Shown: positions 955 through 35,615, counted from the stretch's first letter. The stretch is DNA of 36,920 nucleotides from Klebsormidium nitens (GCA_000708835.1 DF237704.1:1-36920); one strand, 5' to 3'. The notes: generated by a model not told the origin, from the letters alone. Program-made: numbers and translations.

Positions 955-2080
955 AGGCAATGGAAGTGCCAAAGCATCCCCAAGCAATGCAGCAACCTCA
1001 GCACTTCACAAGAAAGTAGCCACATCAAATATGAGAACAGCACAGCAATCCGCAAGTTATCCCCACAGCACTGCAGCAACCTCAGCACTTCACAGCATTT
1101 AAAAAATGCTAGAACTAACAGGTGCAACCCTAGCATCCTCGGCAGGGATCACTGCCGAGACATTATTTTCAATTGCTACAGCAACCCGCAGCAACCCAAC
1201 CCCCAAGGACTGCAGCAACCTCAGCACGTCACAGGAAAGCAGCATTCATTTTTGTCAGCTGCAACTCTGGCATCCCTGCATTTTAAACTGCTAAAGGAAA
1301 ACGCAGCAACCTAGCCACCACAACAAAGCAGCATTTTTTAAACGCTGCCAGAAGCAACCCTAGCACTTCTGCCTAGAGCAGCATTTTCAAAGTGCTGCGG
1401 CAACCCTAACACCCCATCAAAGTGCTGCCAAAAGAAAACACAGCACCCTCCACCTGCCAGAAGAAACCCTAGGCCCACCAAAAACCACCATTGAAGAAAG
1501 GCACCCTTTACCACCTGCCAGAAGCAACCCTAGCACTCCCGCTAAAAAGCACAATTTCCAAAGCGCTGTCAGAAGCAACCCAGACACCCGCACCAAAGAG
1601 CACCATTTCCAAAGCGCTCTGTCAGGAGCAACCCTAGCACCCCTACTAGAAAGCACCATTTCTAAAGCGCTGTCAGAAGCAACCCTAGCGCGCCACCCAA
1701 AAGCACCATTTCCAAAGCGCTGCCAGAAGCAACCCTACCACCCCTGCCGAGAGCGGCATTTCTGCGACCAAAGAAACAGCATTTTCAGAGCGCTGTCAAC
1801 TACAACCATAGCACCGAGAAGCAACATTCATAAATGCTGTCAGCCCCAACCCTAGCAAAGTAAAGCAGGATCTTCAAAGCTGCAGCAATTCTAGAACCCC
1901 ACAGGGAAGCAGCATTTCCAAAGTGCTGCCAGAAGGAACCCTAGCACTTATTCTAAGAAGCACCATTTTGGTGCTGTAGGTGCTCACTTCCAAAGCGCTC
2001 CAGCACCCCTAGTAGTCCCATAGCATCCCCAATTCAACAAGCAGAGAAGCAGTGTCAAGAACAACACTGCAACCCCTGTG
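955..2080 (+). repeat. Degenerate minisatellite, ~50-53 bp period, core AGAAGCAACCCTAGCAC...AAAGCACCATTTCCAAAGCGCTG(T/C)C
   Basis: Best-preserved units start near 1520, 1571, 1624, 1675 and 1725. More degenerate CAACCCTAG and GCAGCAACCTCAGCAC copies run from ~990 to ~1940. Confidence 0.8.
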
Positions 2081-3384: not shown

Positions 3385-4671
3385 TTACTTGCGCCACACT
3401 TCCTCCACATACAGTCGGAAGGCGGCATAACTTTTCCACCGCCCTAACTCCATTAATTGCTTAACGTTGTAGTTCAGGTTTACAGCCGCATGCTGAACGG
3501 CAGAGCGGCGGAAGCTATGTACAGTTTCTCCCTCAAACAACCCGGCTTCTTTGAGCCGTTTTTGCAACCTTTTTCTCAGAGTATCACTGCTCATTGGCTC
3601 GTTGACAAAGCCGGTCCGGCTCCTGTTCATGGCTCGGAACAAGAACCCATCCCCTCCGACTGAATGCCCTCCGTCCTCCATGCCAAGGAGCAGCGCCTCG
3701 GCTGCCTCCACGAAGGTTAGGCGACTTTGAGAGTCCGGCGCCGCGAGCGGAATCCGCGCGCTTGGCTCCTGCCGGACCGTCTTGCTCCAACCCGGGTAAG
3801 CCGCCTGCTCTTCCAACTCTACTTGCCGCCGCTGCAGCTGCCCGCACTCCTTTCCCCGCGCGAGCGTCTCCCACAGGTATAGCACGGCAGCCTGGTCTGT
3901 CAGCATCACACACCTCTCTAAACCAGGGGAACTATCCTGGATTAGCTGCGCAAGGTGCGCCAGCAGAGCATCCAGCTTCGCTTCTGTAAAGACTTTAGCC
4001 CGTTGCACCTTTACCCCTTGCTCGTGCAACATCTTCTCATAACCGACGCGGAATGATTTCACCACCTCAGCTTTGGCAGGATTGTTTCGCCCTTCGAAGC
4101 CGAGGAGGGAGTAGGACTTTGATAAATCCTTTACCACGTGGGTCACGGCTGACGCTGACGGAATGGGCTTCCCCGTCCTGGGCAGCTTGGTCCTGCAACC
4201 GGCCCTATGATTGGGGGATCAAATCCCCCGTTATGAACGCCCCTACGTCTGCAGCTGTAGCGGTCTCAACCGTTACACCGAATGCATTCCGCGCCAAGAA
4301 ATCTTGGTACTGCTGAAACGTCCGCTTACGGCCGCTGTACTGGCTTCATTAACGCTCTTCTCTGCAATCTTCCCAAAGCTGGCGAGCGCCCCGTCATAAA
4401 ACCGTTGCGTCTGCTCCGCACTCATCTTTCCGCTCGCTCCGCAGGTCCCACCCAAACCCACCCCACGGATTGCTCGCAGCTGTTCCGCGCACCTTCGTTG
4501 GAAGCCCAACCTGCAGACCAAAAACCCACCTGTGATCTCCAATAATTGTCGTTTGGGCAAACGATTGTCTTTTTGGGGCCCGGCGTTTTCGGCACAGCAG
4601 AGGCGCTTTGCAGCCGTCCGGGCGCCCCCCAACACCCGTATCGGAAGGTTGATATTGAATGGAACTGACAA
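3385..4671 (-). pseudogene. DIRS-type tyrosine recombinase; catalytic domain intact, two compensating frameshifts in the N-terminal part
   Basis: ORF 3385..4146 has ARGKECGQL (RxxE), WSKT, HSFRR, GRWKS and RLY (catalytic R-K-H-R-W-Y). The upstream core-binding region reads KSVNEA / YSGRKRTFQQYQDFLARN...DVGAFITGD / IPNHRAGC...SAVTHVVKDL, with shifts near 4340 and in the G-run 4213-4217. Start codon uncertain. Confidence 0.9.
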
Positions 4672-6314: not shown

Positions 6315-9300
6315 TTAATCACTACGTCGGCGCCCTTCGTCTTCCGTAAGGAAAGGCTCTGAATCAGAATAATGATTTGGATTGATGCACTTGACAAGGT
6401 CAACGGGACTTTCGACCTGCAACCAACGAAGGGAATCCGTTGGATCCGGTGCAGTTTTCTCCAAGCTGGCCCGGTCAACTCTTCTCGAATCCTAGTTGTT
6501 TGGGTCAAAGTGCGCGACTACTGTTTCCCTGTAGAACGAAGTTGCAGACCCGCACTGGAGGCCGGTGGCCCCAAGTTGCAAAGAATGCAAACCTGACTAC
6601 AGGGAGCGAGCACACCTGACGAGAAGGGTACGTAAGGCGATTTGGAGCAAAGTAGAGCCGCAACACCCACGGCACCAATCCCATCAACACGCAGAAAACA
6701 GGAGCTTCCCGGGGAATCTGACTCAAGTTCAACCTCTGCCAATCAGAGAACAAATCCAAGTGCATTGCTACAATGCGACAACGACCAGAATAGGAGTCAG
6801 GTTCGGGCGGCCAGGTCTGACGTAAAGTGCAACGTCAGCAAACGCGGAGCGCCCACCTGCAGCAACTCCCGCACGTTGTTTTCCAGGTCGTTGGCTTCCG
6901 CAATGAGCGCGCGCATGCTGAAGACGAGCGCGTTAAAGGAGAGCATGGCCGTGTTGTCCACGATGCGGATGTCCGGGTTGGACAGCTTCGCGGAGATCAG
7001 CCCCGAGATGACGTCCTCGTACCTGGGAAATACACGTGGCGGGGCCGAGTTTTGGTACCAAATACATGGATGAGCAGTAGTTTTTGAGGATTTTGGATTG
7101 CAAACGTGAGGGTAATGGAGCAGACGTCGAGAAGCGCCAGAAGCCGCAGTGAGGAAAGGCCTCGATGCACAGTCTTCGGTCCTTCGTCTGTTCTGTCAAA
7201 GAGTTGAGAAGCCGCTGTGCTTTTTGCCACCGAAGCCTCCGCTTTTCATTCTTTGACACTCAGCTCAAGCTAAGAACAGCATCTTAAATGGCTCTCGTCC
7301 TTTATTCCAGCTCATGCTTCGATTCCATGATCGGGTAAGCGCTACACGCACCCTGATAGCGCAGCTTGAATGCGAAAGCTGGCTGCATGGAGCAGTCAAG
7401 GCTCATTACAAACCCTCTGACGAGCGAAAAACCCCGTCGCTCTGCCGCCTTTTAGCAACTTGCGTTCCAAATGACTTCCATGACCCAGGACGTGTTTGGA
7501 ACGAACTTGCAAAAGCACAGGATGAAGACAGTCCCTGAAACATATCCCCAGGTCAACTCACTGATACCGCTCACCTGTCTTCGAACNNNNNNNNNNNNNN
7601 NNNNNNNNNNNNNNNNNNNNNNNNNNNNNNNNNNNNNNNNNNNNNNNNNNNNNNNNNNNNNNNNNNNNNNNNNNNNNNNNNNNNNNNNNNNNNNNNNNNN
7701 NNNNNNNNNNNNNNNNNNNNNNNNNNNNNNNNNNNNNNNNNNNNNNNNNNNNNNNNNNNNNNNNNNNNNNNNNNNNNNNNNNNNNNNNNNNNNNNNNNNN
7801 NNNNNNNNNNNNNNNNNNNNNNNNNNNNNNNNNNNNNNNNNNNNNNNNNNNNNNNNNNNNNNNNNNNNNNNNNNNNNNNNNNNNNNNNNNNNNNNNNNNN
7901 NNNNNNNNNNNNNNNNNNNNNNNNNNNNNNNNNNNNNNNNNNNNNNNNNNNNNNNNNNNNNNNNNNNNNNNNNNNNNNNNNNNNNNNNNNNNNNNNNNNN
8001 NNNNNNNNNNNNNNNNNNNNNNNNNNNNNNNNNNNNNNNNNNNNNNNNNNNNNNNNNNNNNNNNNNNNNNNNNNNNNNNNNNNNNNNNNNNNNNNNNNNN
8101 NNNNNNNNNNNNNNNNNNNNNNNNNNNNNNNNNNNNNNNNNNNNNNNNNNNNNNNNNNNNNNNNNNNNNNNNNNNNNNNNNNNNNNNNNNNNNNNNNNNN
8201 NNNNNNNNNNNNNNNNNNNNNNNNNNNNNNNNNNNNNNNNNNNNNNNNNNNNNNNNNNNNNNNNNNNNNNNNNNNNNNNNNNNNNNNNNNNNNNNNNNNN
8301 NNNNNNNNNNNNNNNNNNNNNNNNNNNNNNNNNNNNNNNNNNNNNNNCACCTGTCTTCGAACTCCTGAAAGACGTGCCGGATGTTGACCGCCCCCGCCTC
8401 GCCCAGGCGTCCCGCCGCGTCAGTCCCTTGCACGGGGTGCTGGAACACCTCCTTGTCAACCGGCTTGTCCCCCCCTCCCCAATGAAGGTGCAAGTTGCCG
8501 TGCTTATGCCGCTTCTTTTTCGTGCCCCCCTCCCCTGCTTCCGCTGTGCCTTCGCCTGACGCTTCCTGCGACTCGATATCTAAGGCTGCCTCCTTGTCCG
8601 CTGACCCTTCAGGCTCCTTCTGTACGCTATCCACGCTAGGAGGCCCCAAGCGGCCCTCTCCCCCTACGTCTTCCGTTGGATGGACTCGATCCTGCGGCCC
8701 TCGTTGATTCGCGCCAGCTTGCGCTTCAGAGTGGATCTTCGCACTAGATGGTGGTTCAGAATCCAGATTGCCGTCCGTTCCGTTGACGGCCGCCGCTGCG
8801 GCCGTCAACTCGGTTTCCGAAGAGGGTTGCTTGGTTTGCGTGGGGTTTGCGACTTTTCCGACGGCCCTGGCGGGCGCTCTGAGGTCGATGATCAGACTGT
8901 CGAGGGTGAGAAGGACTTCAGCTTCGAGGGATCGGAGCGGGCCCCTGCGTCAAGGATGGGTTTTGAGACGTCAGATGCAAGGTTTTGGAGCTCTCGAAAA
9001 CCTGCTGAAATCCACAACTTTCGACTTATTTGTAAATATTGCCGGATAGGCGAGCAGTACATGGACGACCTCCGACGTTCCCGGAGATTGTTTGGTTGGA
9101 TAAGCGCATATTGCTCAAGAAGCACCAAGTCCCTGCGGCACTTGTGAGCAGTAGGAAATGTAGATCCATTCAGGAAGCACCAAGCAACGCTAATGCAGGA
9201 AATGTCGACTCATTAAGATCCTCTTTCCAAGTTTCCGCGGAAAAGATGCCTGGTCCTCGACAGGCTTCCATTGTTGAGGTTCGAATTGTTTCATTCTAGG

Positions 9301-17285: not shown

Positions 17286-18385
17286 ATGGCTTTCGGCGCC
17301 GGGCTCTTCGTTGGGCTTTTCATGGGCATTGGGCTTGGTCGGACGGTGCTTGCCAAGCTGAAGAAAGGCACCACACGGCATGTAAGTTCTGGCAAAGCAC
17401 CAAAGTTTCCAACTGCCTCAATGCCACAATGAACCACATAGGACTTTGCAGGTTTGGCTGACGATGTTGCCAAATTGCTACATGATGAAAAGCGCCATCT
17501 ATCCAAGCAAACAACTTGTCTATCACAACCTCACCAATCCACTTGAGTAGCTTGCAGTTCATGAGGAATCAGGTCCTCTCAGCAAATGAAATGCTGTGAA
17601 TCTCGCTGCTCTCAGTCCCTCTTGCTTGATATCTGAAACCAGTTTGAGGAGAAGGTGCTTGTTATCCTGATTGCTGGGGGCATCTTCGTGATGCGCTACA
17701 ATTCCCAATTGTAGCTGCATGCTGGTCCATATCAAAGACGTCCCCATTGGTTGGCACTGCCTTTTTAGAGGAGCCTTGGACTGTGGTGGCGCCTTGCCCG
17801 GACCTCCTCGTTTTTTGGCCGCCTGCATTGAATCTTACTTTTCTGGCAGTTGATCTGATTCCCAGAAATGATTATATGGTGGCAAGTCTCTTCAAAGACC
17901 TGAGACAGCTTGGGATTCTCTTTCTTGGAGCTCTGAGTAAAATTGAAGCCAACTTCGACTCAATGAACTTCATGTCACATGCTAGCTCAACTGCAACAGC
18001 GAAACCTAGTGTTCATACCTGTCAACTTAAAGGGGTTGATGGGACCTTTTGTTTATCCTATGTCCAGGTAGTGCTGTTCGGATTCAAGCCTAGTGTCTCG
18101 GAGGAAAGGAAGTGGGCTATAGCGGCACAGTTTGAGGGCCTTGCAGAAACCATTCCCCAGGTCCAATCGTTTGAGTGGGGCACTGACGTCAGCATTGAGA
18201 ACAAAGCTGAGGGCTTCACTCATGCCTTCCTGTTGACGTTCCACTCCCAAAAGGATCGGACGGCGTATGTTGACTCTGAGGCGCACCAATCATTCGTGCG
18301 ATCTGGGATTCCTGACCTGGACAAGCTGATCATCATTGACTATCTGCCCAAGTCTGTCAAAGTCGACCCTCGGCCCTTCTTGTAG
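17286..18385 (+). CDS. Dabb / stress-responsive A/B barrel protein (HS1-like), isoform A: exons 17286-17381 + 18068-18385
   Basis: The leader MAFGAGLFVGLFMGIGLGRTVLAKLKKGTTRH|GTAAGT joins in phase 0 to CCAG|VVLFGFK...FEWGTDVSIEN..EGFTHAFLLTF...YVDSEAH...LDKLIIIDYLP, the classic Dabb signature. Confidence 0.88.
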
Positions 18386-24100: not shown

Positions 24101-26175
24101 CCTGTTGACTGGCGGAGGCCTCACCACATGCAGTTGATGACGAAGCTGACCACATAGATAGGGTAGAGCCACAACATCTGCATAGCAACGGACTGTCCAT
24201 CATGCTTCTTCCAATGACAGACAAAGGAGCAGGTTGCCACCATTTTTCCCACCTTGGCAACACTACAAGTGCGTAATGACAGAATCGATGTCAATCGGGT
24301 CCCAGCCTCCACTTGTTACTGGCTTATGATAAAAGGCTACCTGTTCAAAAGAAAAAACAGTCTCCAGACTGGTTTAGTCCAAGCTAGCTTCTGACTCCTC
24401 TTCTCAATCGCCTCTGGTCAAAACCGCAGCTCCAATGGCGGTGATCAATCCTGCCTGCTTACCACACCTACTACATAACGAAGGGTATATTATGCAAAAT
24501 CTGAAGTGCAACTCACGTTATACACGACAATGAGGAGAGAGTGCAGGGCCGCCAGGCCTCCTGCTCCGACGCCAGCGGTTGTTTCTGCTTTTGAGTGACG
24601 GGGTAAGTCGAGGAGGTAGCGCAAGGAAGGGTCAAGGAAACCCTTGAGCAGGATTATACTGGGAAAGCAGAAAAAATTTGGTCAGGTCAGAGGGTTGAAT
24701 ATCGAATCGGAGGTACTTCATCAACCTTCTGATAAGGGGCAAAAACATGCACCTCCATCTATGGTCCTCTCCTGGCAAAACCAGTCAACAGAGGGGTTGG
24801 TCAAAGTCGACATGAAACATTTGGAAGGGGCAGCTGACACAACATGTCACTCTTGTTGCAGAAAGCATCTACACTGCTCTTGGAACCAAGAACATCGCAT
24901 GCTATGTCTTGATTGCAAGGGGCTCATAGGAGAACTCAACAATTCTTTTCCTGGTATCTTGGAAACGCCAATTGTTAGCACTACTTAGTGGTAGTCCAGT
25001 CCAAGTCTCACAAAAATCCTTTTTAAAAGTCTAAACAAGACTAAAACAAACTTCTGGGGAAAAAGTGGTCAATAAAGGAAAAGAGCAAAGGTGCAGTTTC
25101 TACCTTCCCAAGAAGAAGAACCCGTTGAGAAGAGAGCACTGGCTGGTCCGCACAAGCACGGGGCGCGACCTACATTGGAGATGCACAAAATGGTCTTTCC
25201 TTGCCCCATTGCAGAGAAGTTGCCCCATTGCAGAGAAGAACATTCCGACTTGGATTACCCACTAATATGACAGAGAGTCAATGGAGAGCCCTGTTTGTTG
25301 ATGACACTGTAAATGGCAATTCAGCATGGAGCTTCCTTGCTTACCTCTTCTGACAAATATTTTCTGAAACCAGGTGATAACCCAACCTACTGGGTGACCA
25401 CCACTCTCTTGTTCAAAGCGGGACAAACAAAGTTGTGGAGAAAAAAAAAGCAAAAGTGAAGCACCAACAAACGACTATTTTCAAACATTCAACATGAAAG
25501 GAAGTGAAAACCAGCCAACTTTCAAGGACTTATTACCACCATTTCTGCTCATGTCTGGCGCCACCTTTCAGAACACCAAGACTGGCTCTCTGGAACAACG
25601 CTGCTGCTTAAGGTTCTAGGTTACAGGCATGATGTGACAAGTCCCATGACGAAAAAGAGAGCTGGACTGCTACAAGACCGATCTCTAACTTAAAGATGTC
25701 CCTATCAACAAGGGATGAGAACAAACCTGGCAAGAATTCCCACAGTCCTGTGAATCATCAGGGCCTCCCAAAAGCCCAATAACCAGCTTTGCACCGCATA
25801 CTTCAGAGACTCCCCCCAGGAGACGGGACCGCTAGGTGCAACTCTGCTGCCCCCCTTTTTGCTTCCCTCGTCAATTGTGGGCAGAATTTGCTGAGCAGTA
25901 TTATCTCGCTCCACCTCCCGAAGCAACCCTAGCCCCTGGAAAGCTGAGCTTTCGGAAGTGCTGGCTTCAAACCCGGAGCTAACTCTCTCATGACCACTTT
26001 CCTCCTTTCTAAATGTCTCCTCAAGTTTGGGAGTTCCACGCTTCCGGCTCCCACTTCCATCTGACGATGCAACCTCACTAGGGCGCATATTCCCAACGGC
26101 CGCCCTGCCCTGCAAAGGAGCGTAAGATGGGGAAGTGCTGAAGGGAAGACCACCTCGCGAGGGCGCCACGGCCAT
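21170..26175 (-). CDS. EI24: EI24 (etoposide-induced 2.4) homolog, 10 exons, ~438 aa
   Basis: Exons 26175-25727, 25169-25104, 24658-24517, 24177-24125, 23562-23358, 22751-22666, 22258-22176, 21841-21765, 21390-21263, 21197-21170 (last exon uncertain). Motifs: WLLGFWEAL.IHR, RTSQCSLLNGFFFLGS, LWLYPIYVVSF..N..WHQDIA, IGEEVY, PYVG..MNFLLLSWLYAYYCY.YKW, RL.FFETHWAFFAGFG, IFPLFV. An alternative upstream ATG lies at 26241. Confidence 0.92.
22976..23252. mobile_element. 277-bp MITE with perfect 20-bp TIRs (CACTGGTCACACACGCCGGA) and TA on both flanks, in EI24 intron 5
   Basis: Left TIR 22976-22995 and right TIR 23233-23252 are exact reverse complements. TA at 22974-75 and 23253-54. GC-rich, non-coding interior. 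Confidence 0.9.
23897..23925 (+). repeat. Short tandem duplication TCCATCTCTACCTT x2 (intronic)
   Basis: Copies at 23897-23910 and 23912-23925. Confidence 0.8.
25201..25238 (+). repeat. 19-bp tandem duplication TTGCCCCATTGCAGAGAAG x2 (EI24 intron 1)
   Basis: Exact adjacent copies. Confidence 0.85.
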
Positions 26176-26445
26176 TCCGTAGCGCCGCTTCAGCCTCAGG
26201 CTCAGCTCTGCAGACTGCAGCTCAGCTTGCCAAATTGGCATACGGCTGGAGGACTCGTGTTCCGTCCACTGGTAAGAATGAAGCGGACGGAAGTGTCCCA
26301 CGAGCAGCGGATCGCAAATTCTACCCGTCGAAGGAGGCTGTACTCAACTGTCCACAAGATGCTTTCGACGCCGGATGACGGTCGAACTTTTCCCTCCAAT
26401 TTGAGACTTCTCGAGACGAGTCTGCACGGTCTTGACTCTCTCTAG

Positions 26446-26564: not shown

Positions 26565-29500
26565 ATGGCGCACTCATCAAGGTCAAATGCAACAGACGGG
26601 CGCCCTAGGATGAAGGAGGGCGCCAAGATGGACGACCCCGAGGACCGGCTATGCAACATCTGCTGCGTGGAGCCGTCGGATGTCTACTTTGTACCCTGCT
26701 GCCATCAGAGCTGCGCGCAGTGTGTGCAGAAGCTTCGGATAGCAAACATTTACAAGGTACGCACGCGAGGATAGGTTCTGCTTGGAGGAGAATTTGTTAC
26801 AAAGAAGCTTCATTGGTGATCTCCTTATGCAGGAGAAAGAAGAGCTGCTGATGGGCTTTGAGACTTAGGGTTTCTTGGTAATGGTGCACAGTTCTTGTCC
26901 TTGGTCTGGTTGAATGATCAAGCAAACTAGAAAAGAGCCTGGTCATCGGGTTTTTGAGGAAACGGGCGCCTGAAAAGTCTAAATGATATTTAATTTGACT
27001 GCCCATGCTAAGTCAGGCTGGTCGGCGAAATTGACTTCGTCACGATCCTTGTGGTTTTTGAAGTGCAAAGCTGGCAGATGACCCCGTCAGAATCTCGGAG
27101 TTGGGGAATGCAACCAATAGGGACTGCCAGGGTTTGTGTGGGCTCCTGGTTTTACTACTCGATCTCAAAGACCTAGTCCTTTGGGGTTCTTTCCCCATGT
27201 CAAGTTACAGGGTTTGTAAACCTGTTCTTCTCTGAATTCTTGTAGCTCAGCAAAACTCTCTGCAATTGAATCAAAGTATGTGGCTAGACATTGTCCCCTC
27301 TACTGTAGATCTGAGCGGCAGGTTTGAATCATAGGCCCACAAATAGAGTGGAACTATTTATGAGGGAGTGGTGGCATTATCAGGAGAAAGAAAAGCTGCA
27401 AACCGTGGGTCTGAATGCACGGAGATCCTTGAAATAGGGGCATCGAAAGTTGGCGGCACGCTGCACTGTTTGACTGGGGTTCTGCGCATATCAGCGGTGT
27501 GGCAGGAGAATTCTCTTTTGGACTTCCGTGTTGGGATGGGGTTCATATCGGCTGGAGACCCTGAAGCGGTTTGCGAATGAAAGTCATTGTGAAAATAAAA
27601 TTTGAATGATTGCTATCTTTTCCTCTGTTCGTTTTTGAGAACATCGTGCAGTGCATCTATATCTACTGCATTCTTTCCATGCAGGCTGATAAAGGCGTTC
27701 GGTGTCCCTTCTGCCGCCAAGTAGTTGAGGGCTACAGTGATACTCCTCCTGTCCTTCAAAAAGAAACAAAACCAGTTGTTGAGGCCCCTAAAGGCCCTGA
27801 TCCTCGGACACTCTATGGGAGGAATGGGATCCAATCGATTGGCCAGGTCAATGAGTATGTGCCACCCCGGGGCATCTCAGAGCATATTCCCACCTTAGAC
27901 TCGTTACGAACAGATGCAATCCCAGAGGGTTATATTATACCACCGCTGACCGCAAAGAATGACGTTGTGGATATGATTCACGACAAAACGGTGAGTGGGC
28001 TCGTCATTTTGGTCCCTCTCTGCATTGTTTTTCTTGAAGAAGTATTCGGTGCTTGATCTGGCTTTTACGGGCTGCGGTCTAGGAACCATTTGATTGGTAT
28101 CAACTGCATTTATGGAGCAGCGCAGATTGGTGAGCTTCACATAAGTAGGTCTCAAAGTCCTTCAGACTGCTGACACTTTCTGTAGTTCGAATGCACCTCT
28201 CTTGATATGGTGGTCTGTCGCTTTTGGGAGGTTGCAATCTGTTCGAAGTGAATCATCTTCATCGCTCCTTGCAATGTTGCTGTGTGATTACATTGAGGAG
28301 TACTTCGTTGGAATTTCATTATCTCAGTCCGAACGGTTGATCAGAGAAGTTCGTCTTATGGTTGAGGACTTCTGCCACTTCAAGTGTGCCACTCCAAGTA
28401 TACTTACAGATGAACATTGCAGCAACATCACATGGTCTCTTTAATGCAAGAATGCATGTTCAAAAGGCTGTTTCATGAGCAAAGCAGCTTGACTGATACA
28501 CGATTGTTTGAGCATGCAATGCTTTGTCAGAGCATGTGCTTTTCAATATTGTTATGCTCACAACTGATCCGCAAATCACTGTGCAGGGTGCTCGTCATCT
28601 TGACTTCATGCTCAGAGATACCTACCCGAAGAGCGGAAAAGTAGCTCGTCAATGTGTAGTTTTGGGGCCTCATCTTAGCAAATTGGCGGCACATCGTAAG
28701 TGTGAACACGCACCTCTTGCAGCATCAATCCCCCTCCAAGCACTTCTAGTGTTGAATACCGCCTCTGAAAGCCTGCAGTTGTTGAAGTTGTTCCAAAAAG
28801 CAGGGAACAGGGGTTTCTTTGTGGTCAGGTGTCGGATACGCTCTTCTTTGGAGCTTCGCGAGTCAGATGCAATCGCTGCGACAGTAGCCCTGCGCTCCGC
28901 CCAGAAAGTCGTCCAGCCCATTGCCTTAAGGAGCTTGTCATTCAGACCTCAAGTCGGGGTTCCCACACTTCGCCTGTCGCTCAAGTTACTTTCTTGTCAC
29001 TTGCAGCTTTTGCAAACTATGTGGTTCAACGCCTTCTAGACTATGCCCACGCGCATCGGGACGGCCCCGACGGGTGGCCGGGCGGTTTTTTGACCCTGCT
29101 CAAGGCATTCTGTGCAAACGGGGGCCTTGTGGAAGCGGCCAAGGAGCAACGCGGAACTTTTGCTTGTCAGAGGCTGGTGAGATAATGTCTGTTGATTTCG
29201 ATCCTTGCATCCTGGTGCGGTCTACTGGACTCCTTGTTTGATTCACCTGTTGTCTACTCGTTCTCTTCTCCTGGCTTGCGGACAAGGAAAGGAGGGTACG
29301 AGCTTCAAAGCTTGACATTGAAAGGGCGAAATGAAGTAGGACAGCATTTGGACCAATGGAAGCAGAGCTGATAGAGGGAATGCGTACCCATGTCTGGCAG
29401 TCCGATGCAAAAGACAGTCACACATTCAAGGTGTCTACTAGAGGATTTCAGCAAGAGGATTTTGTAGAAGGTAATTTATGTAGTTGGATTCCAGGTGTCA

Positions 29501-32500
29501 GCAGCTTGGGAGTAGACTGTGTTAGCTCAGAGATTCGGAAAGTGGATCAACCCGAGAGCTCTGTTTGTGTGGCTGGTGGTTTGGGGTATTGGCTAGCTGA
29601 TTGCGGCTGCTATTGCGAACAGATACTGCATGATTCACTCTTGCAAACTCGTTTTTCTGTGTCTCACTGTACTTCTGTCCGCTGTGCTTCAGGCGTTATG
29701 GCTGCGCACGCAAGAGGATGTAGCTGTCTTCATAACAAGCCTGAAAGGTCACATGGTGAGACTGCTTGCCCCTTCACTCAGTATGTCCTTGCTCTGTTTT
29801 CAGCAGCCTTAATCTGCTGACCTACTGGACTTGCAGGTTCCCTTGTTGGGCAGGATTCAGATGGCAACCAGAGGGTTCAAACAGAAGTTGCTGTGCCAGT
29901 CAGCGTTGGGGCCTGTGAGAGAAGCGACTCTTTTCAAAAGCTGCAAGCGGGGAGGCTACAAGTCGCAAGTTACTTCATGCTGACATGGTCATCATTGGGT
30001 ACATGCTAAAAGAAGTGTTACATGGAGCAGTGCGCAAGCAGTCCTCTTGTCGAGGTCAAATTTCACTTCTGAAAGCTGTGAAGAGTTGCTGAATGGCTCT
30101 GGGAGACTAGTTGGGCGGCTAAGGATCCGCCTGAGCTTGGTGGGGTGCTCGAGAGGACGCTCGAATTGTTGTCCGCCCTAAAGAAAGGCTGTCGTTTCTC
30201 ATTGTTCTTGTCTAGCAGAAACGTAGAAGCCAGCGTGCTGACGTCATTCCGTCTCTCATCCCAGGTCACTCTGGCACTGGATCCCCATGCTTACTGGGTG
30301 ATTGAGCGCCTGGCAGAATCGTTCATCACGTCATTAGCTGCTCCCGTGGGGGCGAAACGAAACATCCCAATTGCGGTGGCACTGAAAGGCCTGCAGATAA
30401 TGTGCGAGGATATGGGGCCGCAAGCAGCACGGTTGTCAAAACATCAGGTAAGGCATTGAAAGCAAAGATTTATTCTCAGCATGAGAATCAGTGATTAACA
30501 GGCTTTCAGAGTTTTCGTGAGATGAGAAATATATGGATTACGAGGTGTATTGCATGTTGAGGGTACATTTGCAATTCTCGACTAGATTGAAAGAATTGAG
30601 GCTGCCGTTTTCCGCAATGGAGAGACGAATCGATTATAACTTGGATCAGGCCCTTTATGATCAAGGGACAATTTGACTACTTGTTTCGCTTCGACTGGTT
30701 TTTTTTGGTCCACATTCTGGAAGGTTTACCAGCATCTAATTGTCTCTCGCATTTCCCTCAGTTCGCAACAGCTGATTGCAACCAGCAGTGATCCTCCTAT
30801 TGTGCAATGAAACCGAGTGGCGTGGGCAATACTAAGCAGATCTACAAAGGCGACTCAATATGCTTGCACCTGTACCCACAATAGTAGACCACCCTCACCT
30901 CACCTTGCGCAATGGCTATCTCTACGTTGTTTTCGTCCACTTTAGTCGCTAATCAGTGCATCCTCTCTTGTGTGCTTCCAGCAAGCCAGCATGACCCTGG
31001 TTGAGTGCATCCGTTGGTGCGTACCGGCGCCCGAAGCCATGTCTGCTGCCATGACGTTAGCGGATTCCGCAAGGGAGATTGTGGGGTCCCGGTACCCTAA
31101 TCGTGCATTGCAAGGTTTGCTCACGTAAGTGTTTGATTCCCGCCGCTTTTTCGAAGCTGAACATCTTTGCATCGCTCTTGTTTCACTCTGATCTCATCGT
31201 TGCCTGGTTGGGCCACTTTCCGGGGCCTATGCTTTGGTTCACGAAAGTTTAGTGACGCTCGGATCCATCACATAACGAACATCTTTTTCTGGATTGGCCA
31301 CAGTCCACAGGGAGGAACGTCAGTACGACCTGATCCTCTGAGCTGTACCAGTCCCTTTCTGCTTTGAACCTCAAGACTTTATTGCTTTGACCGAGCGAAA
31401 GGTTTTTGGAGGGCTAAGGGCGCCGTTCGAAGTATTCAAGCTCTTCTGTAGCACAGTCTTATGCGTTTCCTCTTGTTTTTGCAGGTTAAACGTTCCGATT
31501 ATTGCAGAAGCCATTGTAACCCAATTGCGAGGAAAGCATGCGGAGCTGTGTCTCGATAAGGGCCCCAGTCTCGGTCCGAAGCTGACCAAGTCCATCCTGG
31601 CAACCCCCTGTGGTGAGAACACCGCTTCTTCGTATACGCTTTCCTCCACGAAAAGCGTGTGCTAGACTAGCTTGTGATCCAAGCAGTCTGCCGGCCGTTG
31701 GTTGTGACAGTCCCCGCCTGTTGCAAGCCCGAATAGTAACGGTAGATTTTGTCGGAAAGGCCGAATCTGGACGCTGCTGCTTGGACTGTGTATGTAACCA
31801 TGTTGCCAAACTCTAGTTGGATAGGCAGATGGTTCCTGCTTTCAGATAGGTAGATCGAGACCCGTCCATCCTGGGCAAATACCACCGGGAGTCCATAGGC
31901 TCAGCTCAGGATCCCCTTCCCCGTTCAATGTCGACGTTGACAGCCTTCCTTCCATCACCGGAGCTTTTCACCACTTGACTAGCAAACACCCATCGCACGG
32001 TCTTGGATTCCATTCGGGTTTTGGAGTTGAAATCTTGATACCCTTGCAAGTCATTTGGTATCCATGTAAACAATACCCGCCCGCGCTCTCCCACAAAAGT
32101 CTGCTACTCACGGACCCTGGATTCCGGAAATCTAGACTTCGGAACATCTTAACTTCTCATTCACCATCTTTGTGAGTGCAGTGGGCGACGAGCATCGCGT
32201 CGAGATCGTGGACGAGCTGCTGCATCCCGCCGTAATCATACCCATCCTCGAGAACGTTTTCGCAACAGACACGCTAGCATTTGGACTGGCCCTGCTGCCA
32301 AGAAGGTGAGCGGGCAACACATATCGTGGCAACACTGTGGATACTGGTGTATTTGTTTTGCTGACGTTGATTGCTGCTGGACCTGGCGTCACTGGTTGGC
32401 TGGTGGTATGTTCCAGATCAAATTGACTCCTTGCGAAAACGTCATCTCTATCAGGACCCCGTTGTAATAACCGTTATGATTTATTGCGCTCAAGAGGAAC

Positions 32501-35319
32501 ATATCCGATAAGCAAGCTTGCTTGCTCTTGAGTCAATACTTCTTTGTCTCTGCCACAGAAGACTGGTTGATGAAAGCCGAGTGTTTCCAAGAGTCGAAAG
32601 AAGAACGAGCGAAATGCCCCTGCTTCTGAATGCGCCGCACTCTTACACGTTCCAGTCGTAAGCCTGCTTTAAAGGAATGCTGTCAGCACAGTCTTCCGTC
32701 TAAAGAAACGACCATTTTTTTTAACGTCACGATTATTAGCCTGGCTCAAGAGGCGCGTACTATTCCTCCCAGGACAATTGACTCAGCTCACCGGCCTGAC
32801 AATGGCCTAGCAGCCACGTGCGTCACTCGTTTCTATTGATCAAACAACCTGCGGTTCTACAATCGGCGGTTCATTACTGGAAAACGACTGTAAGAGTAGT
32901 ACAACCTGATTTCTTCGACGGAGCTTTCGACGCTGACCACCAGACGTGTCCGCCCGCAGGTTTTTGGACGTCCGGCTGGAGCGCCTGAGCCACGTGGAGC
33001 GCCGCCACCCATCCTTCATCCTCGCCGAACTGATCAAGCTCGTCCACCAGAACCGAGTCATCTGCGGCATCGTCAGTCATCCCCAAAACGCTCGACCCAA
33101 CGGAACGGGGGCATCGATCGCCCCCCAAAGCAGACCCCCAAGCGCGGAAGGGTTCCCAAATCACGCGAACGGCCAGCCTTTACCCACTGGCTTCGTGCCG
33201 AATCCCCCTCCGCGGGCGCAATTGCCAAAGGACCTGTTTCAGAACTTGGAGGGTTTTGAGCCGGCACCCCCCCCGATCGCAGCCCAGCCAAACCCCCCTC
33301 CAGTCACGATTCCTGCAATTCCGTCGGCGCCCCCCCCAGCCCCTTATAGTGGTTCTGAACCATCTTTGGTAAACAATAGCCCCATGCCACAGACCCCAGG
33401 ACAGAGTAGAGTGAACTCCTTCGAGGGGGGTGGTTTTAGCAGCGGAAGCAGCCCCCCCGAGGGATCGTACCTGCCCCCCCACAAGGCGGACAAGATCAGG
33501 GAGCCGTCGGCTGTGTTTGTGCCGGGCCCCAAGGAGGCCAATGGGGGAGCGCCACGTGTCGATCCGCAGGAGGCGCTCGCCCGGGTGGAAAGGAACGCGG
33601 GGTACGTTCCGCCACACATCCGCAAGGTCGCTGAGCAAGCGAAGGGCCCGGGCGCGCCCGCCCAGAAGACGCGGGACGGAGATATGTGCGGCAAGTGCAA
33701 CGTCAGGCTGGCGAACATGGTGCGTGGACGGTTATTTCTGCTTGTCTCGTTATTTGTAAGCCCGTTTGGAATGTAGACATGATTGCTATTGTTGCATTGG
33801 GGAGCACCCTTGTTCTAATCATTAGGAGGTTTATGCGCGTCATCTAGGACTCGTGGTTGCTGCTGTTGGTGCTTTCCGAGTTCTTTCACAGAGTCCTGCT
33901 GGTGAAGTCAGCGGAAAAAGTCTTGCGGAGTCGCTGTGGTGAAACTAGCGTAAAAGATAGAGATATCGGTCGGCCCTGCTTTGGCTCAAGCAGTGAAAGG
34001 ATAAGAATGATGACCTTCCAAAGGGTGATTTTTGAACCCCAATTCTTAAGCTGACTGGTGTGGAGTGCACGATCTGCGTCCATGTTGCAATCTATGCGCA
34101 TGCTAGGAATTAAGTCCCTATCGACATGTGTCTTCTAACGGGGCTGTTTCGTTCAGTCCTGTTTCATTCCGAGCGCTGTAGATTTTGGTGCAAGATCTTG
34201 CACCACTTGTACTCTGCGCGTATTTTATGCCTCTTCCCTAATCAAAATCGCTTGCTCCACAGCTCTTACCGGAAGCTACCCTCATCATTGGAAATGTCCT
34301 TGTCCCCATATCTCGCAGGTGCTGTTTGGTCTATCTGCCGAATTAGCGTGCCATCAGAGTACTGCAAAGCTTTGTCTTAGATGTCCTAGATCTAACTTGC
34401 GGGCGTCCTTTTCTGCAGGTACTTCTGGACTGCGCCCACCTATGCGCCTGCTCCAACTGCGCGCAATTCCTCAGGAACTGCCCCACCTGCAACGCTCCGG
34501 TTATGGGCGTCATCGAGGTCGAGCTCCCCCCTCCCAAAGGCCCTGTTTCCGAGGCCCCCGCACCGAGCACCCCCACGGAGAGGCCGCCCGTCACGCCAAC
34601 AGGGCCCCGGGAAGATTCCCCCGCCCCGGCTCCCAGCACCCCCTCCCCCAAAGCGGGCCAGCAGCCGAACCGAGCGCGCGCCCCGTATAACCCGCTGAAA
34701 CCCACACAACCTCCGCAGCCGGGATACGGGCAGGCGAGCGATGCTTCTGAGGCGCAGCCAACGCATCCTGCGCAGCAGAATGGATACGGGATGAGCGGTC
34801 TGGCGCAGCCAAACGGGCCGATCACATTTCCGGCACAGAACGGGTTCAGGCAAGGGGCGCCTGCGGGATCCGCTTTTGGGCAAGGTAAGACTGGGCACAC
34901 GGTTCCTTGGTACTTTATTCTGTTTGTCTTTGGTGGTTCGTGCGTCCTGTGCCTGTTTTTGTCAAGTGTTCCGCAGGAGCACTTCTCTTTTCAAACGAGA
35001 GGAGCTGGTTCTGCCCGACCATGCAAACCCGACGTACGGTCGCACCGAATCTTGAAGCCCTTGTCCCCAATAGGCACTTGCTTTTGGGATCATGTGCTCC
35101 CTACTCCACTTCAATCTTCAACGGCTTCTTCTTACCCTTTCGCTGTCTTGTGCAGCAGGTCCATCGCAAGCGGCACCAGTGTACCCCCCACCACCCATGG
35201 CCGCTCCCTTTCCCGGCAGACCACAAGTGCCAGGTGGCATGCCTGCAGCACTGCCAGCTGGCGTGCGGCGCCCTGCGCCATATCGCCCTCCCCTAGCTTA
35301 TCGGCCTCCCGGAGTGTAA
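26565..35319 (+). CDS. RING finger + divergent Pumilio/PUF-like repeats + Pro-rich region + second RING finger protein, 12 exons, ~934 aa
   Basis: Phase-consistent exons: 26565-26756, 27685-27990, 28587-28695, 29007-29176, 29693-29755, 30265-30447, 30982-31124, 31485-31612, 32182-32305, 32960-33719, 34419-34884, 35159-35319 (2805 nt). RING1: CNICCVEPSDVYFVPCCHQSCAQC...|...CPFC. PUF-like: LAAH|PFANYVVQRLL, GHM|VTLALDPHAYWVIERL, SRYPNRALQGLL. RING2: CGKCNVRLANM|VLLDCAHLCACSNC...CPTC. Confidence 0.8.
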
Positions 35320-35507
35320 GCGGCAGTACGGGGGCCGTAAAGATCGTTGGGCTGGGACTGGAAGCCGCTACGAACAAGATCCCGAAAAGAGCAGCATCCG
35401 ACTTAGGAACACGTGTCGGCGCCAAGGTGGTTGTGGGGGTCTGCCGGCATTTGTGTACAGGAAGCAACGGGAGTGCGGATTGGAAGAGACACTGGGTTTT
35501 TTGTGTC

Positions 35508-35615
35508 GAGAAAGCGTAATCGGGCGGAAAATTTTGTGAAAGTAGGGGGTTTTATCTGGCCGAGAAGCGTAATCGGGCGAAAAACTTTGTGAAAGGTAGG
35601 GGTTTTATCTGGCCG
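35508..35615 (+). repeat. Two imperfect ~54-bp tandem copies downstream of the RING-PUF stop codon
   Basis: GAGAA(A)GCGTAATCGGGCG...TTTGTGAAAG...GGGGTTTTATCTGGCCG occurs twice. Confidence 0.8.

What the first reader, a model, noticed from the sequence alone, without database searches (positions are those of the whole stretch)
26565..35319. RING - PUF-like repeats - disordered Pro-rich region - RING: candidate RNA-binding ubiquitin ligase of unfamiliar architecture
Seen: 12 exons join in phase into one ~934-aa ORF. Both RINGs and several PUF repeats become recognisable only after splicing (e.g. LAAH|PFANYVVQRLL; ANM|VLLDCAH). RING1 is C3HC4. RING2 has C-x2-C-x11-C-x-H-x3-C-x2-C-x6-C-x2-C spacing, as in the IAP/Neuralized/MEX3 type. 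Known: PUF repeats read single-stranded RNA, and RNA-binding E3s exist (MEX3 KH+RING, Roquin, Makorin). I do not know of a characterised protein with PUF repeats between two RINGs, and Arabidopsis APUMs are not known to have RINGs. Inference: a transcript-targeted ubiquitylation system coupling mRNA recognition to turnover of ribosomes, mRNP proteins or itself.
Basis: partly seen in the sequence, partly recalled or inferred. Interest (0 to 1): 0.85.

Follow-up and report, generated by a model that had tools for sequence, protein, structure and literature searches.

The report
RING–Pumilio–RING ubiquitin ligase gene
This is a real, expressed 12-exon gene of a streptophyte alga whose protein places a classical eight-repeat Pumilio (PUF) RNA-binding domain between two RING ubiquitin-ligase fingers; the layout is conserved from charophyte algae to mosses and lycophytes, and I found no study of it.

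Summary
Spliced contigs from four public studies join exons 2-10 into one molecule through eight GT..AG introns and run on into exon 1. The 12-exon model at 26565-35319 gives 2808 nt, or 935 codons plus a stop, with no internal stop. A close relative's contig (L001) carries all 12 exons, DNA similarity ends at the exon borders, and dN/dS is 0.07 over exons 2-9.

Each RING is split by an intron, and each half passes Pfam zf-C3HC4_3.

Full-length orthologues have the same layout in Selaginella, Physcomitrium, Ceratodon, Chara and Mesotaenium. All are named "uncharacterized".

Their helical domain is a classical PUF domain, not ARM/HEAT:
- Its profile hits only PUM-HD chains in the PDB (PUM1, 2.4e-16).
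- The AlphaFold model has pLDDT 91.5.
- The model matches Puf4, PUM2, Puf5 and FBF-2 at Z 22-26, against 13 or less for ARM repeats.

RNA binding and ligase activity are inferred, not shown. I found no paper on a PUF-RING fusion. I class it as a new variant of the known RNA-binding E3 ligases.

The parts
26565..26756 (+). Exon 1 (aa 1-64): start codon and the first six zinc ligands of RING1 (RING1 begins at 26652)
   Evidence: Pfam zf-C3HC4_3 at 29.4 bits (GA 27), profile positions 1-34/49. An in-frame stop lies just upstream of the ATG. The contig loose end equals 26725-26754.
27685..27990 (+). Exon 2 (aa 65-166): last Cys pair of RING1 (CPFC, to 27714), a disordered linker holding the conserved motif YGRxGIxSIGxxN[DE]Y (27814-27858), and the start of the PUF domain at GY[IV][IV]PPL (27928)
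   Evidence: Spliced contigs. Alignment to orthologues. The AF2 model of the orthologue shows the linker at pLDDT 23-29, with order resuming at GYIVPPL.
28587..28695 (+). Exon 3: PUF repeat 1 (GARHLDFML)
   Evidence: Joint 27990/28587 in 4 runs. 57-59% identity to Ceratodon and Chara.
29007..29176 (+). Exon 4: PUF repeats 2 and 3 (ANYVVQ with triad N-Y-Q; GTFACQ with triad T-F-Q)
   Evidence: Joints. Weak Pfam PUF hit, E 0.06. phmmer found the Selaginella orthologue. Triad table.
29693..29755 (+). Exon 5 (21 aa): a helix between repeats 3 and 4
   Evidence: Joints 29176/29693 and 29755/30265. 81% identity in L001.
30265..30447 (+). Exon 6: PUF repeat 4 (AYWVIE) and an inserted loop
   Evidence: Joints. 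Alignment.
30982..31124 (+). Exon 7: PUF repeats 5 and 6 (TLVECIRW; NRALQG with triad N-R-Q)
   Evidence: Joints. Alignment.
31485..31612 (+). Exon 8: PUF repeat 7 (GPKLTKSIL)
   Evidence: Joints. 86% identity in L001. Alignment.
32182..32305 (+). Exon 9: PUF repeat 8 (TDTLAFGL)
   Evidence: Joints. Alignment.
32960..33719 (+). Exon 10: C-terminal cap helices of the PUF domain (to ~33059), a Pro-rich disordered region with the conserved Y[AV]PPH[IL]R motif (33603-33623), and the first Cys pair of RING2 (CGKC, from 33687)
   Evidence: Joint 32305/32960. 22% Pro. Alignment. Coordinates checked.
34419..34884 (+). Exon 11: the remaining six ligands of RING2 (to 34490), then a Pro-rich tail
   Evidence: Pfam zf-C3HC4_3 at 29.3 bits (GA 27), profile positions 16-47/49. 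Exon-limited conservation in L001.
35156..35319 (+). Exon 12: Pro-rich tail ending in the conserved C-terminal motif RRPAPYRPPLAYRPPGV (35266-35316), then the stop codon
   Evidence: Phase consistency. 72% identity to the Ceratodon C-terminal motif. The motif is present in mosses, Selaginella and Chara.

Best explanation
SHOWN. This is one expressed 12-exon gene encoding a 935-aa protein. In order, the protein has:
1. A C3HC4 RING finger of the zf-C3HC4_3 type.
2. A ~70-aa disordered linker with a conserved short motif.
3. A classical-type eight-repeat Pumilio homology domain (~aa 146-506).
4. A ~200-aa proline-rich disordered region.
5. A second, IAP-type RING.
6. A proline-rich tail ending in a conserved PAPYRPP-type motif.

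It belongs to an unstudied orthologous family present in the window's alga and its relative, in Charophyceae and Zygnematophyceae, and in mosses and a lycophyte. The family is under strong purifying selection.

INFERRED. The protein works as an RNA-binding RING E3 ubiquitin ligase. The concave face of the PUF crescent binds single-stranded RNA. Repeats 2, 3 and 6 keep invariant base-contacting triads: N-Y/F-Q, x-F-Q and H/N-R-Q. The RINGs recruit E2~ubiquitin to modify proteins sitting on or near the bound RNA, or the ligase itself.

RING1 looks like the catalytic one. It keeps the invariant Ile between C1 and C2, the Pro of CPxC, and an Arg directly after the last Cys. RING2 lacks that Arg and, in this alga, has Lys at the Ile/Val position. 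It may instead serve as a pairing or dimerising partner, held close by the flexible Pro-rich tether.
For: - Single transcript: spliced contigs in 4 studies.
- Clean 12-exon ORF.
- Orthologous gene in L001, with conservation confined to exons and dN/dS of 0.07.
- RING halves pass the Pfam gathering score. The orthologues' two RINGs together score 58-68 bits.
- PUF identity: Pfam PF00806 scores 33-34 bits (GA 26.3) in mosses. The family profile hits only PUM-HD chains in the PDB (PUM1 2.4e-16, PUM2, Pumilio, Puf4, Puf3, Mpt5, FBF-2). The AF2 model has pLDDT 91.5 and pTM 0.87. Foldseek's top 50 are all PUM-HD over 330-390 columns. VIA Z is 22.5-26.4 for classical PUFs, 13.6-18.6 for Nop9/APUM23/Puf-A/Puf6, and 13.1 or less for ARM/HEAT.
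- The triad residues N/Q (R2), F/Q (R3), E (R5) and R/Q (R6) are among the invariant columns across roughly the whole streptophyte range.
- Precedent: RNA-binding RING ligases are an established class (PMC5707401). One of them, MEX-3C, is described as an RNA-binding E3 in which ubiquitin regulates deadenylation (PMC4617606 abstract).
Against: - No RNA-binding or ubiquitylation assay exists for any member.
- On the window's own exons taken singly, Pfam PUF reaches only E 0.06. The PUF call for this protein therefore rests on colinear alignment to orthologues at about 40-59% identity.
- Five of the eight repeats (R1, R4, R5, R7, R8) have non-canonical triads, so sequence-specific RNA reading may be partial or lost.
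- The structure was predicted for the moss orthologue from an alignment of only 6 sequences.
- The roles assigned to RING1 and RING2 rest on textbook E2-contact positions, not on any test.
- The runs are labelled 'RNA?' by guess only, although intron-less GT..AG joints can hardly arise otherwise.
Confidence: 0.6

Rival explanations
1. The PUF-fold domain has lost RNA binding. It serves as a protein-binding substrate receptor, ARM-like in use, of a two-RING E3 ligase.
For: Repeats 1, 4, 5, 7 and 8 carry non-canonical residues at the base-contacting positions (A-R-D, Y-W-E, M-T-E, P-K-K and T-D-A in the window). Pfam PUF scores are low, with only one repeat matched.
Against: The canonical-like triads of R2, R3 and R6 are invariant from Chara to Selaginella. 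This is hard to explain without a nucleotide-type ligand. The best sequence and structure matches are RNA-bound classical PUFs, well above ARM proteins.
Confidence: 0.2
2. It is a nucleolar, ribosome-biogenesis PUF in the manner of Nop9, APUM23 or Puf6. It binds pre-rRNA, and its ligase activity acts on pre-ribosomal factors rather than on mRNPs.
For: Pfam PUF_NOP9 (PF22493) scores 27.0-28.9 bits against a GA of 27 in two Physcomitrium proteins. APUM23 and Nop9 are the next-best structural matches, at Z 18.6 and 17.7.
Against: Classical mRNA-binding PUFs score clearly higher in structure (Z 22.5-26.4). They also score far higher in sequence (PUM1 2.4e-16 against APUM23 0.14). The domain has 8 repeats in ~350 aa, not the 10-11 repeats of Nop9 or APUM23 (that repeat count is from general knowledge).
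Confidence: 0.1
3. The RINGs are structural zinc modules or dimerisation devices without ligase activity. The protein would then be a PUF-type translational regulator with zinc-finger accessory domains.
For: RING2 lacks the Arg after the last Cys and, in this alga and its relative, has Lys at the E2-contacting hydrophobic position (CGKC, CAKC). No activity data exist.
Against: RING1 keeps all eight ligands plus the invariant I, P and R of canonical active RINGs in every orthologue (invariant columns). Both RINGs pass a curated RING model.
Confidence: 0.07
4. These are two neighbouring genes, RING1-PUF and IDR-RING2, wrongly read as one.
For: None found. The E10/E11 and E11/E12 joints were not directly laid with reads.
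Against: One contig per run spans E1 through E10 and continues ~1.3 kb beyond the laid stretch. RING2's first Cys pair lies in E10, on the same exon as the end of the PUF domain. Six orthologues from five species are single proteins with both RINGs.
Confidence: 0.02

Closest known systems
Classical Pumilio/FBF (PUF) proteins: human PUM1/2, Drosophila Pumilio, yeast Puf4/Puf5, C. elegans FBF-2, plant APUM1-6 type
   Same: An eight-repeat, ~350-aa crescent. The helix-2 motifs sit in the same register (G-x-x-V-[IVL]-[QE]). The family gives the best sequence-profile and structure matches. Repeat 2 carries the N-Y-x-x-Q triad that reads uracil in classical PUFs (the code itself is from general knowledge).
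   Different: Sequence identity is only 13-20%. Only about three repeats keep canonical triads. Known PUFs, including the Arabidopsis, rice, moss and Chlamydomonas sets surveyed in PMC2848763, are not reported with RING domains. Known PUFs act by recruiting deadenylase or other partners, not by carrying a ligase domain of their own.
RNA-binding RING ubiquitin ligases (RBULs): MEX3A-D (KH+RING), Roquin, Makorins (CCCH+RING), CNOT4 (RING+RRM)
   Same: An RNA-binding module and a RING E3 module in one polypeptide. In MEX3 the RING is a C-terminal IAP-type (zf-C3HC4_3) finger, as RING2 is here. Low-complexity regions are present.
   Different: The RNA-binding module is a PUF domain. PUF is not among the RBD classes listed for the human RBUL families (CCCH, KH, RRM, K-rich; PMC5707401). 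There are two RINGs, one on each side. Pfam found no KH, CCCH or RRM in the exons or the orthologues.
XB3/XBAT31-type and IAP/BOI/LOG2-type plant RING ligases
   Same: Both RINGs belong to the zf-C3HC4_3 group. RING1 aligns end to end with the RING_XB3-XBAT31 model (2-56/57), including the long second loop.
   Different: Scores of 22-27 bits are well below that model's cut-off of 50, so RING1 is not a member. There are no ankyrin repeats or other XBAT features.
Non-classical PUFs: Nop9, APUM23/24, Puf-A/Puf6
   Same: PUF-fold helical repeats. Borderline Pfam PUF_NOP9 hits in mosses.
   Different: The structural fit is lower (Z 13.6-18.6 against 22.5-26.4). The sequence signal is negligible (E 0.14). 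The repeat number and shape differ.

Membership tests
PUF / Pumilio homology domain | Eight tandem three-helix repeats forming a crescent (PUM-HD fold) | tested here: met
   Tested on the moss orthologue P0009:183-540. AF2 gives pLDDT 91.5. Foldseek's top 50 are all PUM-HD. VIA Z is 22.5-26.4 over 303-327 residues. The window exons E2-E10 align colinearly to this domain.
PUF / Pumilio homology domain | Sequence match to the curated PUF repeat model (PF00806) at or above its gathering score | tested here: inconclusive
   Window exon 4 alone scores 13.6 bits, E 0.06; the exons could only be scanned singly. Moss and Mesotaenium orthologues score 26.6-34.3 bits, at or above the GA of 26.3. Selaginella (15.7) and Chara (24.3) fall below it. 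The family profile against PDB gives PUM1 at 2.4e-16.
PUF / Pumilio homology domain | Base-contacting triad (helix-2 positions 12, 13, 16) in each repeat | tested here: inconclusive
   Canonical-like and invariant in R2 (N-Y/F-Q), R3 (x-F-Q) and R6 (H/N-R-Q). Glu at position 16 in R4 and R5. Non-canonical in R1, R7 and R8.
PUF / Pumilio homology domain | Binds single-stranded RNA | not testable with these tools
   Needs EMSA, SELEX or CLIP.
RING-type E3 ligase (zf-C3HC4_3 group) | Eight zinc ligands in cross-brace C3HC4 spacing | tested here: met
   RING1 is C-x2-C-x11-C-x-H-x2-C-x2-C-x17-C-x2-C across E1/E2. RING2 is C-x2-C-x11-C-x-H-x3-C-x2-C-x6-C-x2-C across E10/E11.
RING-type E3 ligase (zf-C3HC4_3 group) | Match to PF13920 at or above its gathering score | tested here: met
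   The window halves score 29.4 and 29.3 bits against a GA of 27. The orthologues score 58-68 bits with two stretches.
RING-type E3 ligase (zf-C3HC4_3 group) | E2-contact residues: a hydrophobic residue between C1 and C2, the Pro of CPxC, and a basic 'linchpin' after C8 (general knowledge of RING:E2 complexes) | tested here: inconclusive
   RING1 has all three and they are invariant (C-N-I-C, CPFC-R). RING2 has the Pro, but Asn after C8, and Lys between C1 and C2 in the window and in L001.
RING-type E3 ligase (zf-C3HC4_3 group) | E2-dependent ubiquitin transfer | not testable with these tools
   Needs an in vitro ubiquitylation assay.
MEX3 family | Two KH domains upstream of the C-terminal RING | tested here: not met
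   No KH hit in any exon or orthologue. It works like an RBUL but is not a MEX3 member.
Nop9 / APUM23-type PUF | Match to PF22493 above its cut-off and the best structural fit to Nop9 or APUM23 | tested here: not met
   At or just above the GA of 27 only in two Physcomitrium proteins (27.0, 28.9). Scores of 19.6-24.4 bits elsewhere, and no hit in Selaginella. Z is 17.7-18.6, below the classical PUFs.
ARM/HEAT repeat proteins | Best structural and sequence match to ARM or HEAT solenoids | tested here: not met
   Best ARM-type Z is 13.1, within the background range for helical repeats and far below PUFs. No ARM or HEAT Pfam hit.

The most novel reading that the evidence does not exclude
This is an ancestral streptophyte 'PUF-guided' ubiquitin ligase. 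The PUF domain reads a short RNA motif and places the ligase on particular mRNPs. The two RINGs, tethered by the Pro-rich linker, form an intramolecular pair of an active RING1 and a partner RING2, and RNA occupancy controls its assembly or access to E2. Ubiquitylation of mRNP, decay or ribosomal proteins would then be RNA-sequence-dependent. The system would have been kept from Klebsormidium-grade algae to lycophytes and then lost, or strongly diverged, in seed plants. Because the PUF code can be engineered, such a ligase would be a natural template for RNA-programmable ubiquitylation.
Probability: 0.3. Interest if true: 0.8.

Novelty: new variant of a known kind. Interest (0 to 1): 0.62.

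Why it matters
RNA-binding E3 ligases link post-transcriptional control to the ubiquitin system. The characterised ones use KH, CCCH, RRM, ROQ or K-rich modules. A PUF domain is the one RNA-binding fold whose specificity is modular and largely predictable. Fusing it to RING domains would therefore give a ligase whose RNA address could in principle be read from sequence and re-engineered.

The family is old, being shared by streptophyte algae, mosses and a lycophyte, and it is under strong constraint. It is also present in genetically tractable Physcomitrium, so the hypothesis can be tested directly. Its apparent absence from the well-studied angiosperm PUF sets may explain why it has gone unnoticed.

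Tried and rejected
1. My first exon guesses from splice consensus were wrong: an exon at 28166-~28300, exon 3 starting at 28531, a 70-nt exon at 29401-29470, and exon 7 starting at 30946. The spliced contigs replaced them.
2. Pfam on single exons gave no usable PUF signal (E 0.06). I went round this through orthologues.
3. phmmer of exon 4 against 1.84 billion representatives gave only 6 hits, and canonical PUFs were not reached. A 56-aa query is too short to bound the family's range.
4. The search for homologous proteins was run with the orthologue, with the family alignment and with the PUF region only. It returned the same 5-7 proteins and never a protein of the window itself. The tool's word filter missed even Chara and Mesotaenium in the region search. 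Absence of seed-plant hits is therefore weak evidence.
5. The ESM Atlas feature search gave nothing usable.
6. Literature searches for PUF/Pumilio with RING or E3, and for the orthologues' locus names, found no relevant paper.
7. Rfam and tRNA scans of the window were empty.
8. Two-gene and ARM/HEAT readings were considered and rejected.
9. A PY-NLS or WW-ligand reading of the C-terminal PAPYRPP motif was considered. It does not fit cleanly in all orthologues, so I leave it as unexplained.

Full report
**What is there**

The window is eukaryotic DNA of about 50% G+C. Earlier notes of this scan call the genome Klebsormidium nitens. I did not test that. It does fit the phylogenetic spread of the relatives found here and the two coded organism labels of the runs.

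Stop-free stretches on the + strand between 26565 and 35319 contain recognisable pieces of two RING fingers and several helical segments. Pfam scans of the stop-free pieces, given by reference, found zf-C3HC4_3 twice. One hit is the N-terminal two thirds of a RING in 26565-26771 (29.4 bits, profile 1-34/49). The other is the C-terminal two thirds of a RING in 34347-35516 (29.3 bits, profile 16-47/49). Both are above the curated cut-off of 27. The PUF model gave only E = 0.06 on the stretch holding FANYVVQRLL.

**One gene, twelve exons**

Twenty public runs from seven studies hold 22-44% of the sampled words of the 8.75-kb stretch. That is about the exonic share.

I laid the contigs of four runs from four studies on 27600-33599, the 6-kb limit set by the operators. 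Each run showed one long contig (2.2-3.9 kb) that skips eight intervals. All eight have GT..AG ends: 27990/28587, 28695/29007, 29176/29693, 29755/30265, 30447/30982, 31124/31485, 31612/32182 and 32305/32960. The part of each contig that hangs over before 27685 reads the last 30 nt of exon 1, found once in the window at 26725. The contigs also run about 1.3 kb past 33599.

The run kind is only guessed as RNA. Even so, intron-less GT..AG joints in four studies are what spliced transcripts give.

The resulting model has 12 exons and 2808 nt, or 935 codons plus a stop. All introns are GT..AG and there is no internal stop. This corrected several of my own consensus-based guesses.

The last two joints (33719/34419 and 34884/35156) lay outside the permitted stretch. 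They rest on three things: phase, completion of RING2, and comparative evidence.

**Comparative support**

phmmer with exon 4 (56 aa, by reference) against 1.84 billion representatives found six proteins. One was an 82-aa fragment at 80% identity (P0001). Another was an 847-aa Selaginella moellendorffii protein (P0005).

The contig that encodes P0001 is from a JGI metagenome (L001). It carries the whole orthologous gene:
- tblastn of each window exon finds all 12 in order. Identity is 80-87% in RING1 and PUF, and 50-60% in the Pro-rich parts.
- blastn similarity begins and ends within a few bases of every exon border from E1 to E11. The introns do not align.
- Nei-Gojobori counts, made exon by exon and then summed over exons 2-9, give pN 0.097 and pS 0.64, so dN/dS is about 0.07.

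**The family**

P0005 retrieved three Physcomitrium patens proteins (at least two distinct), plus one each from Ceratodon purpureus, Chara braunii and Mesotaenium endlicherianum. All are named 'uncharacterized', 'hypothetical' or 'RING-type domain-containing protein'. They map colinearly on the window's exons.

Every exon fell in place from the first Met to the last residues.

Besides the domains, four short motifs are conserved:
- YGRxGIxSIGxxN[DE]Y, in the RING1-PUF linker.
- GY[IV][IV]PPL, at the start of the helical domain.
- Y[AV]PPH[IL]R, in the Pro-rich region.
- PAPYRPPGxYRPP, at or near the C-terminus.

**Is the middle a PUF domain?**

Yes, and of the classical type.

1. Pfam PUF reaches 33-34 bits (cut-off 26.3) in the mosses and 26.6 in Mesotaenium, but falls below the cut-off in Selaginella and Chara. 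PUF_NOP9 is borderline.
2. A profile of the helical domain of six orthologues (A2) was searched against all PDB sequences. It hits PUF proteins only down to E = 0.2: PUM1 at 2.4e-16, then PUM2, Drosophila Pumilio, Puf4, Puf3, Mpt5, PUF-8 and FBF-2. APUM23 scores only 0.14.
3. AlphaFold2 of the moss domain gives pLDDT 91.5 and pTM 0.87, with 22 helices.
4. Foldseek's best 50 PDB matches are all PUM-HD structures, aligned over 330-390 columns.
5. An exhaustive VIA-align search separates three tiers. Classical PUFs score Z 22.5-26.4. Non-classical PUFs (APUM23, Nop9, Puf-A, Puf6) score Z 13.6-18.6. ARM/HEAT and other solenoids score Z 13.1 or less.

Eight helix-2 motifs can be laid in register. 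The residues at the three base-contacting positions are:

| Repeat | Triad in the window | Note |
|---|---|---|
| R1 | A-R-D | non-canonical |
| R2 | N-Y-Q | N and Q invariant in the family |
| R3 | T-F-Q | F and Q invariant in the family |
| R4 | Y-W-E | Glu at position 16 |
| R5 | M-T-E | E invariant in the family |
| R6 | N-R-Q | R and Q invariant in the family |
| R7 | P-K-K | non-canonical |
| R8 | T-D-A | non-canonical |

By the established PUF recognition code (general knowledge), N-Y-Q reads U, and Ser/Cys-Arg-Q reads A. About three repeats therefore look competent for base reading, and the others are unclear.

**The RINGs and the disordered parts**

- RING1 spans 26652-26756 and 27685-27714. 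It is C3HC4 with a 17-residue second loop. It aligns end to end with the XB3/XBAT31 RING model, but well below that model's cut-off.
- RING2 spans 33687-33719 and 34419-34490.
- RING1 keeps, invariantly, the Ile between C1 and C2, the Pro of CPxC and an Arg right after C8. RING2 has Asn after C8 and, in this alga and its relative, Lys between C1 and C2.
- From general knowledge of RING-E2 complexes, I infer that RING1 is the better candidate for the catalytic RING.
- A second AF2 model covering RING1, linker and PUF shows the linker as disordered (pLDDT 23-29). Order resumes at GYIVPPL.
- The stretches between PUF and RING2 and after RING2 are 22-34% Pro with few hydrophobic residues.

**How it probably works**

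Shown: the architecture, expression as one spliced molecule, conservation and constraint.

Inferred: it is an RNA-binding RING E3, in the manner of the known RBULs. The human RBUL families are classified by CCCH, KH, RRM and K-rich RNA-binding domains, and PUF is not among them (PMC5707401). MEX-3C is described as an RNA-binding E3 in which ubiquitin regulates deadenylation (PMC4617606 abstract).

I put about 0.6 on RNA-binding E3 ligase. The rivals are a PUF fold used as a protein receptor (0.2), a nucleolar Nop9-like role (0.1), non-catalytic RINGs (0.07) and two genes (0.02).

**Novelty**

I found no paper on a PUF-RING fusion or on any of the orthologous loci. The survey of plant PUF families never mentions RING or ubiquitin (PMC2848763).

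The proteins are, however, already in public databases with automatic PUF and RING marks, so the architecture is unstudied rather than unseen. No seed-plant member turned up, but the searches that could show this were insensitive, so loss in seed plants is only a suggestion.

- The joined 935-aa protein was neither assembled for nor sent to any search or fold. Natural full-length orthologues returned by the tools were used instead.
- Read laying was given 6,000 letters.

Noticed in passing
window 7588-~8300: There is a run of N here (an assembly gap). The long ORFs listed at 7452-8808 on both strands, and the G+C dip at 7001-9000, are artefacts of it.
   Followed up: partly
window 3385-4146 (-): A 253-aa ORF matches Pfam Phage_integrase (tyrosine recombinase) at 28.8 bits, just above the cut-off of 27.1. 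It may be a Crypton/DIRS-type mobile element in this eukaryotic contig.
   Followed up: no
window 17747-18385 (+): This ORF holds a Dabb stress-responsive A/B-barrel domain (PF07876, E 3e-21). It is probably an exon of a neighbouring gene.
   Followed up: no
window 35507-35615: A 53-nt unit is repeated twice in tandem at 91% match, about 190 nt after the stop codon. It probably lies inside the gene's 3'UTR, since the contigs run ~570 nt beyond the stop if the last two introns are spliced as modelled.
   Followed up: no
window 1515-1744: A 51-nt tandem repeat of 4.5 copies lies in the stretch with extreme AT skew (+0.32) and GC skew (-0.30).
   Followed up: no
window 27814-27858, 33603-33623, 35266-35316: Three short linear motifs inside disordered regions are conserved from Chara to Selaginella: YGRxGIxSIGxxN[DE]Y, Y[AV]PPH[IL]R and C-terminal PAPYRPPGxYRPP. 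Their partners are unknown. A PY-NLS-like reading of the last one fits only some orthologues.
   Followed up: partly
window 29736-29927, 31158-31421, 31709-32145: Short low-depth contigs (depth 2-5, against 250 for the mRNA contig) lie inside introns in run X1. Similar ones lie in the 31613-32181 intron in X5 and X13. They are probably traces of unspliced pre-mRNA.
   Followed up: no
L001 6159-6752 (-) and window 25705-26301 (-): Both the window and the relative's contig have a ~197-aa ORF on the opposite strand just upstream of the gene. This suggests a conserved, divergently transcribed neighbour. It has no Pfam hit.
   Followed up: no
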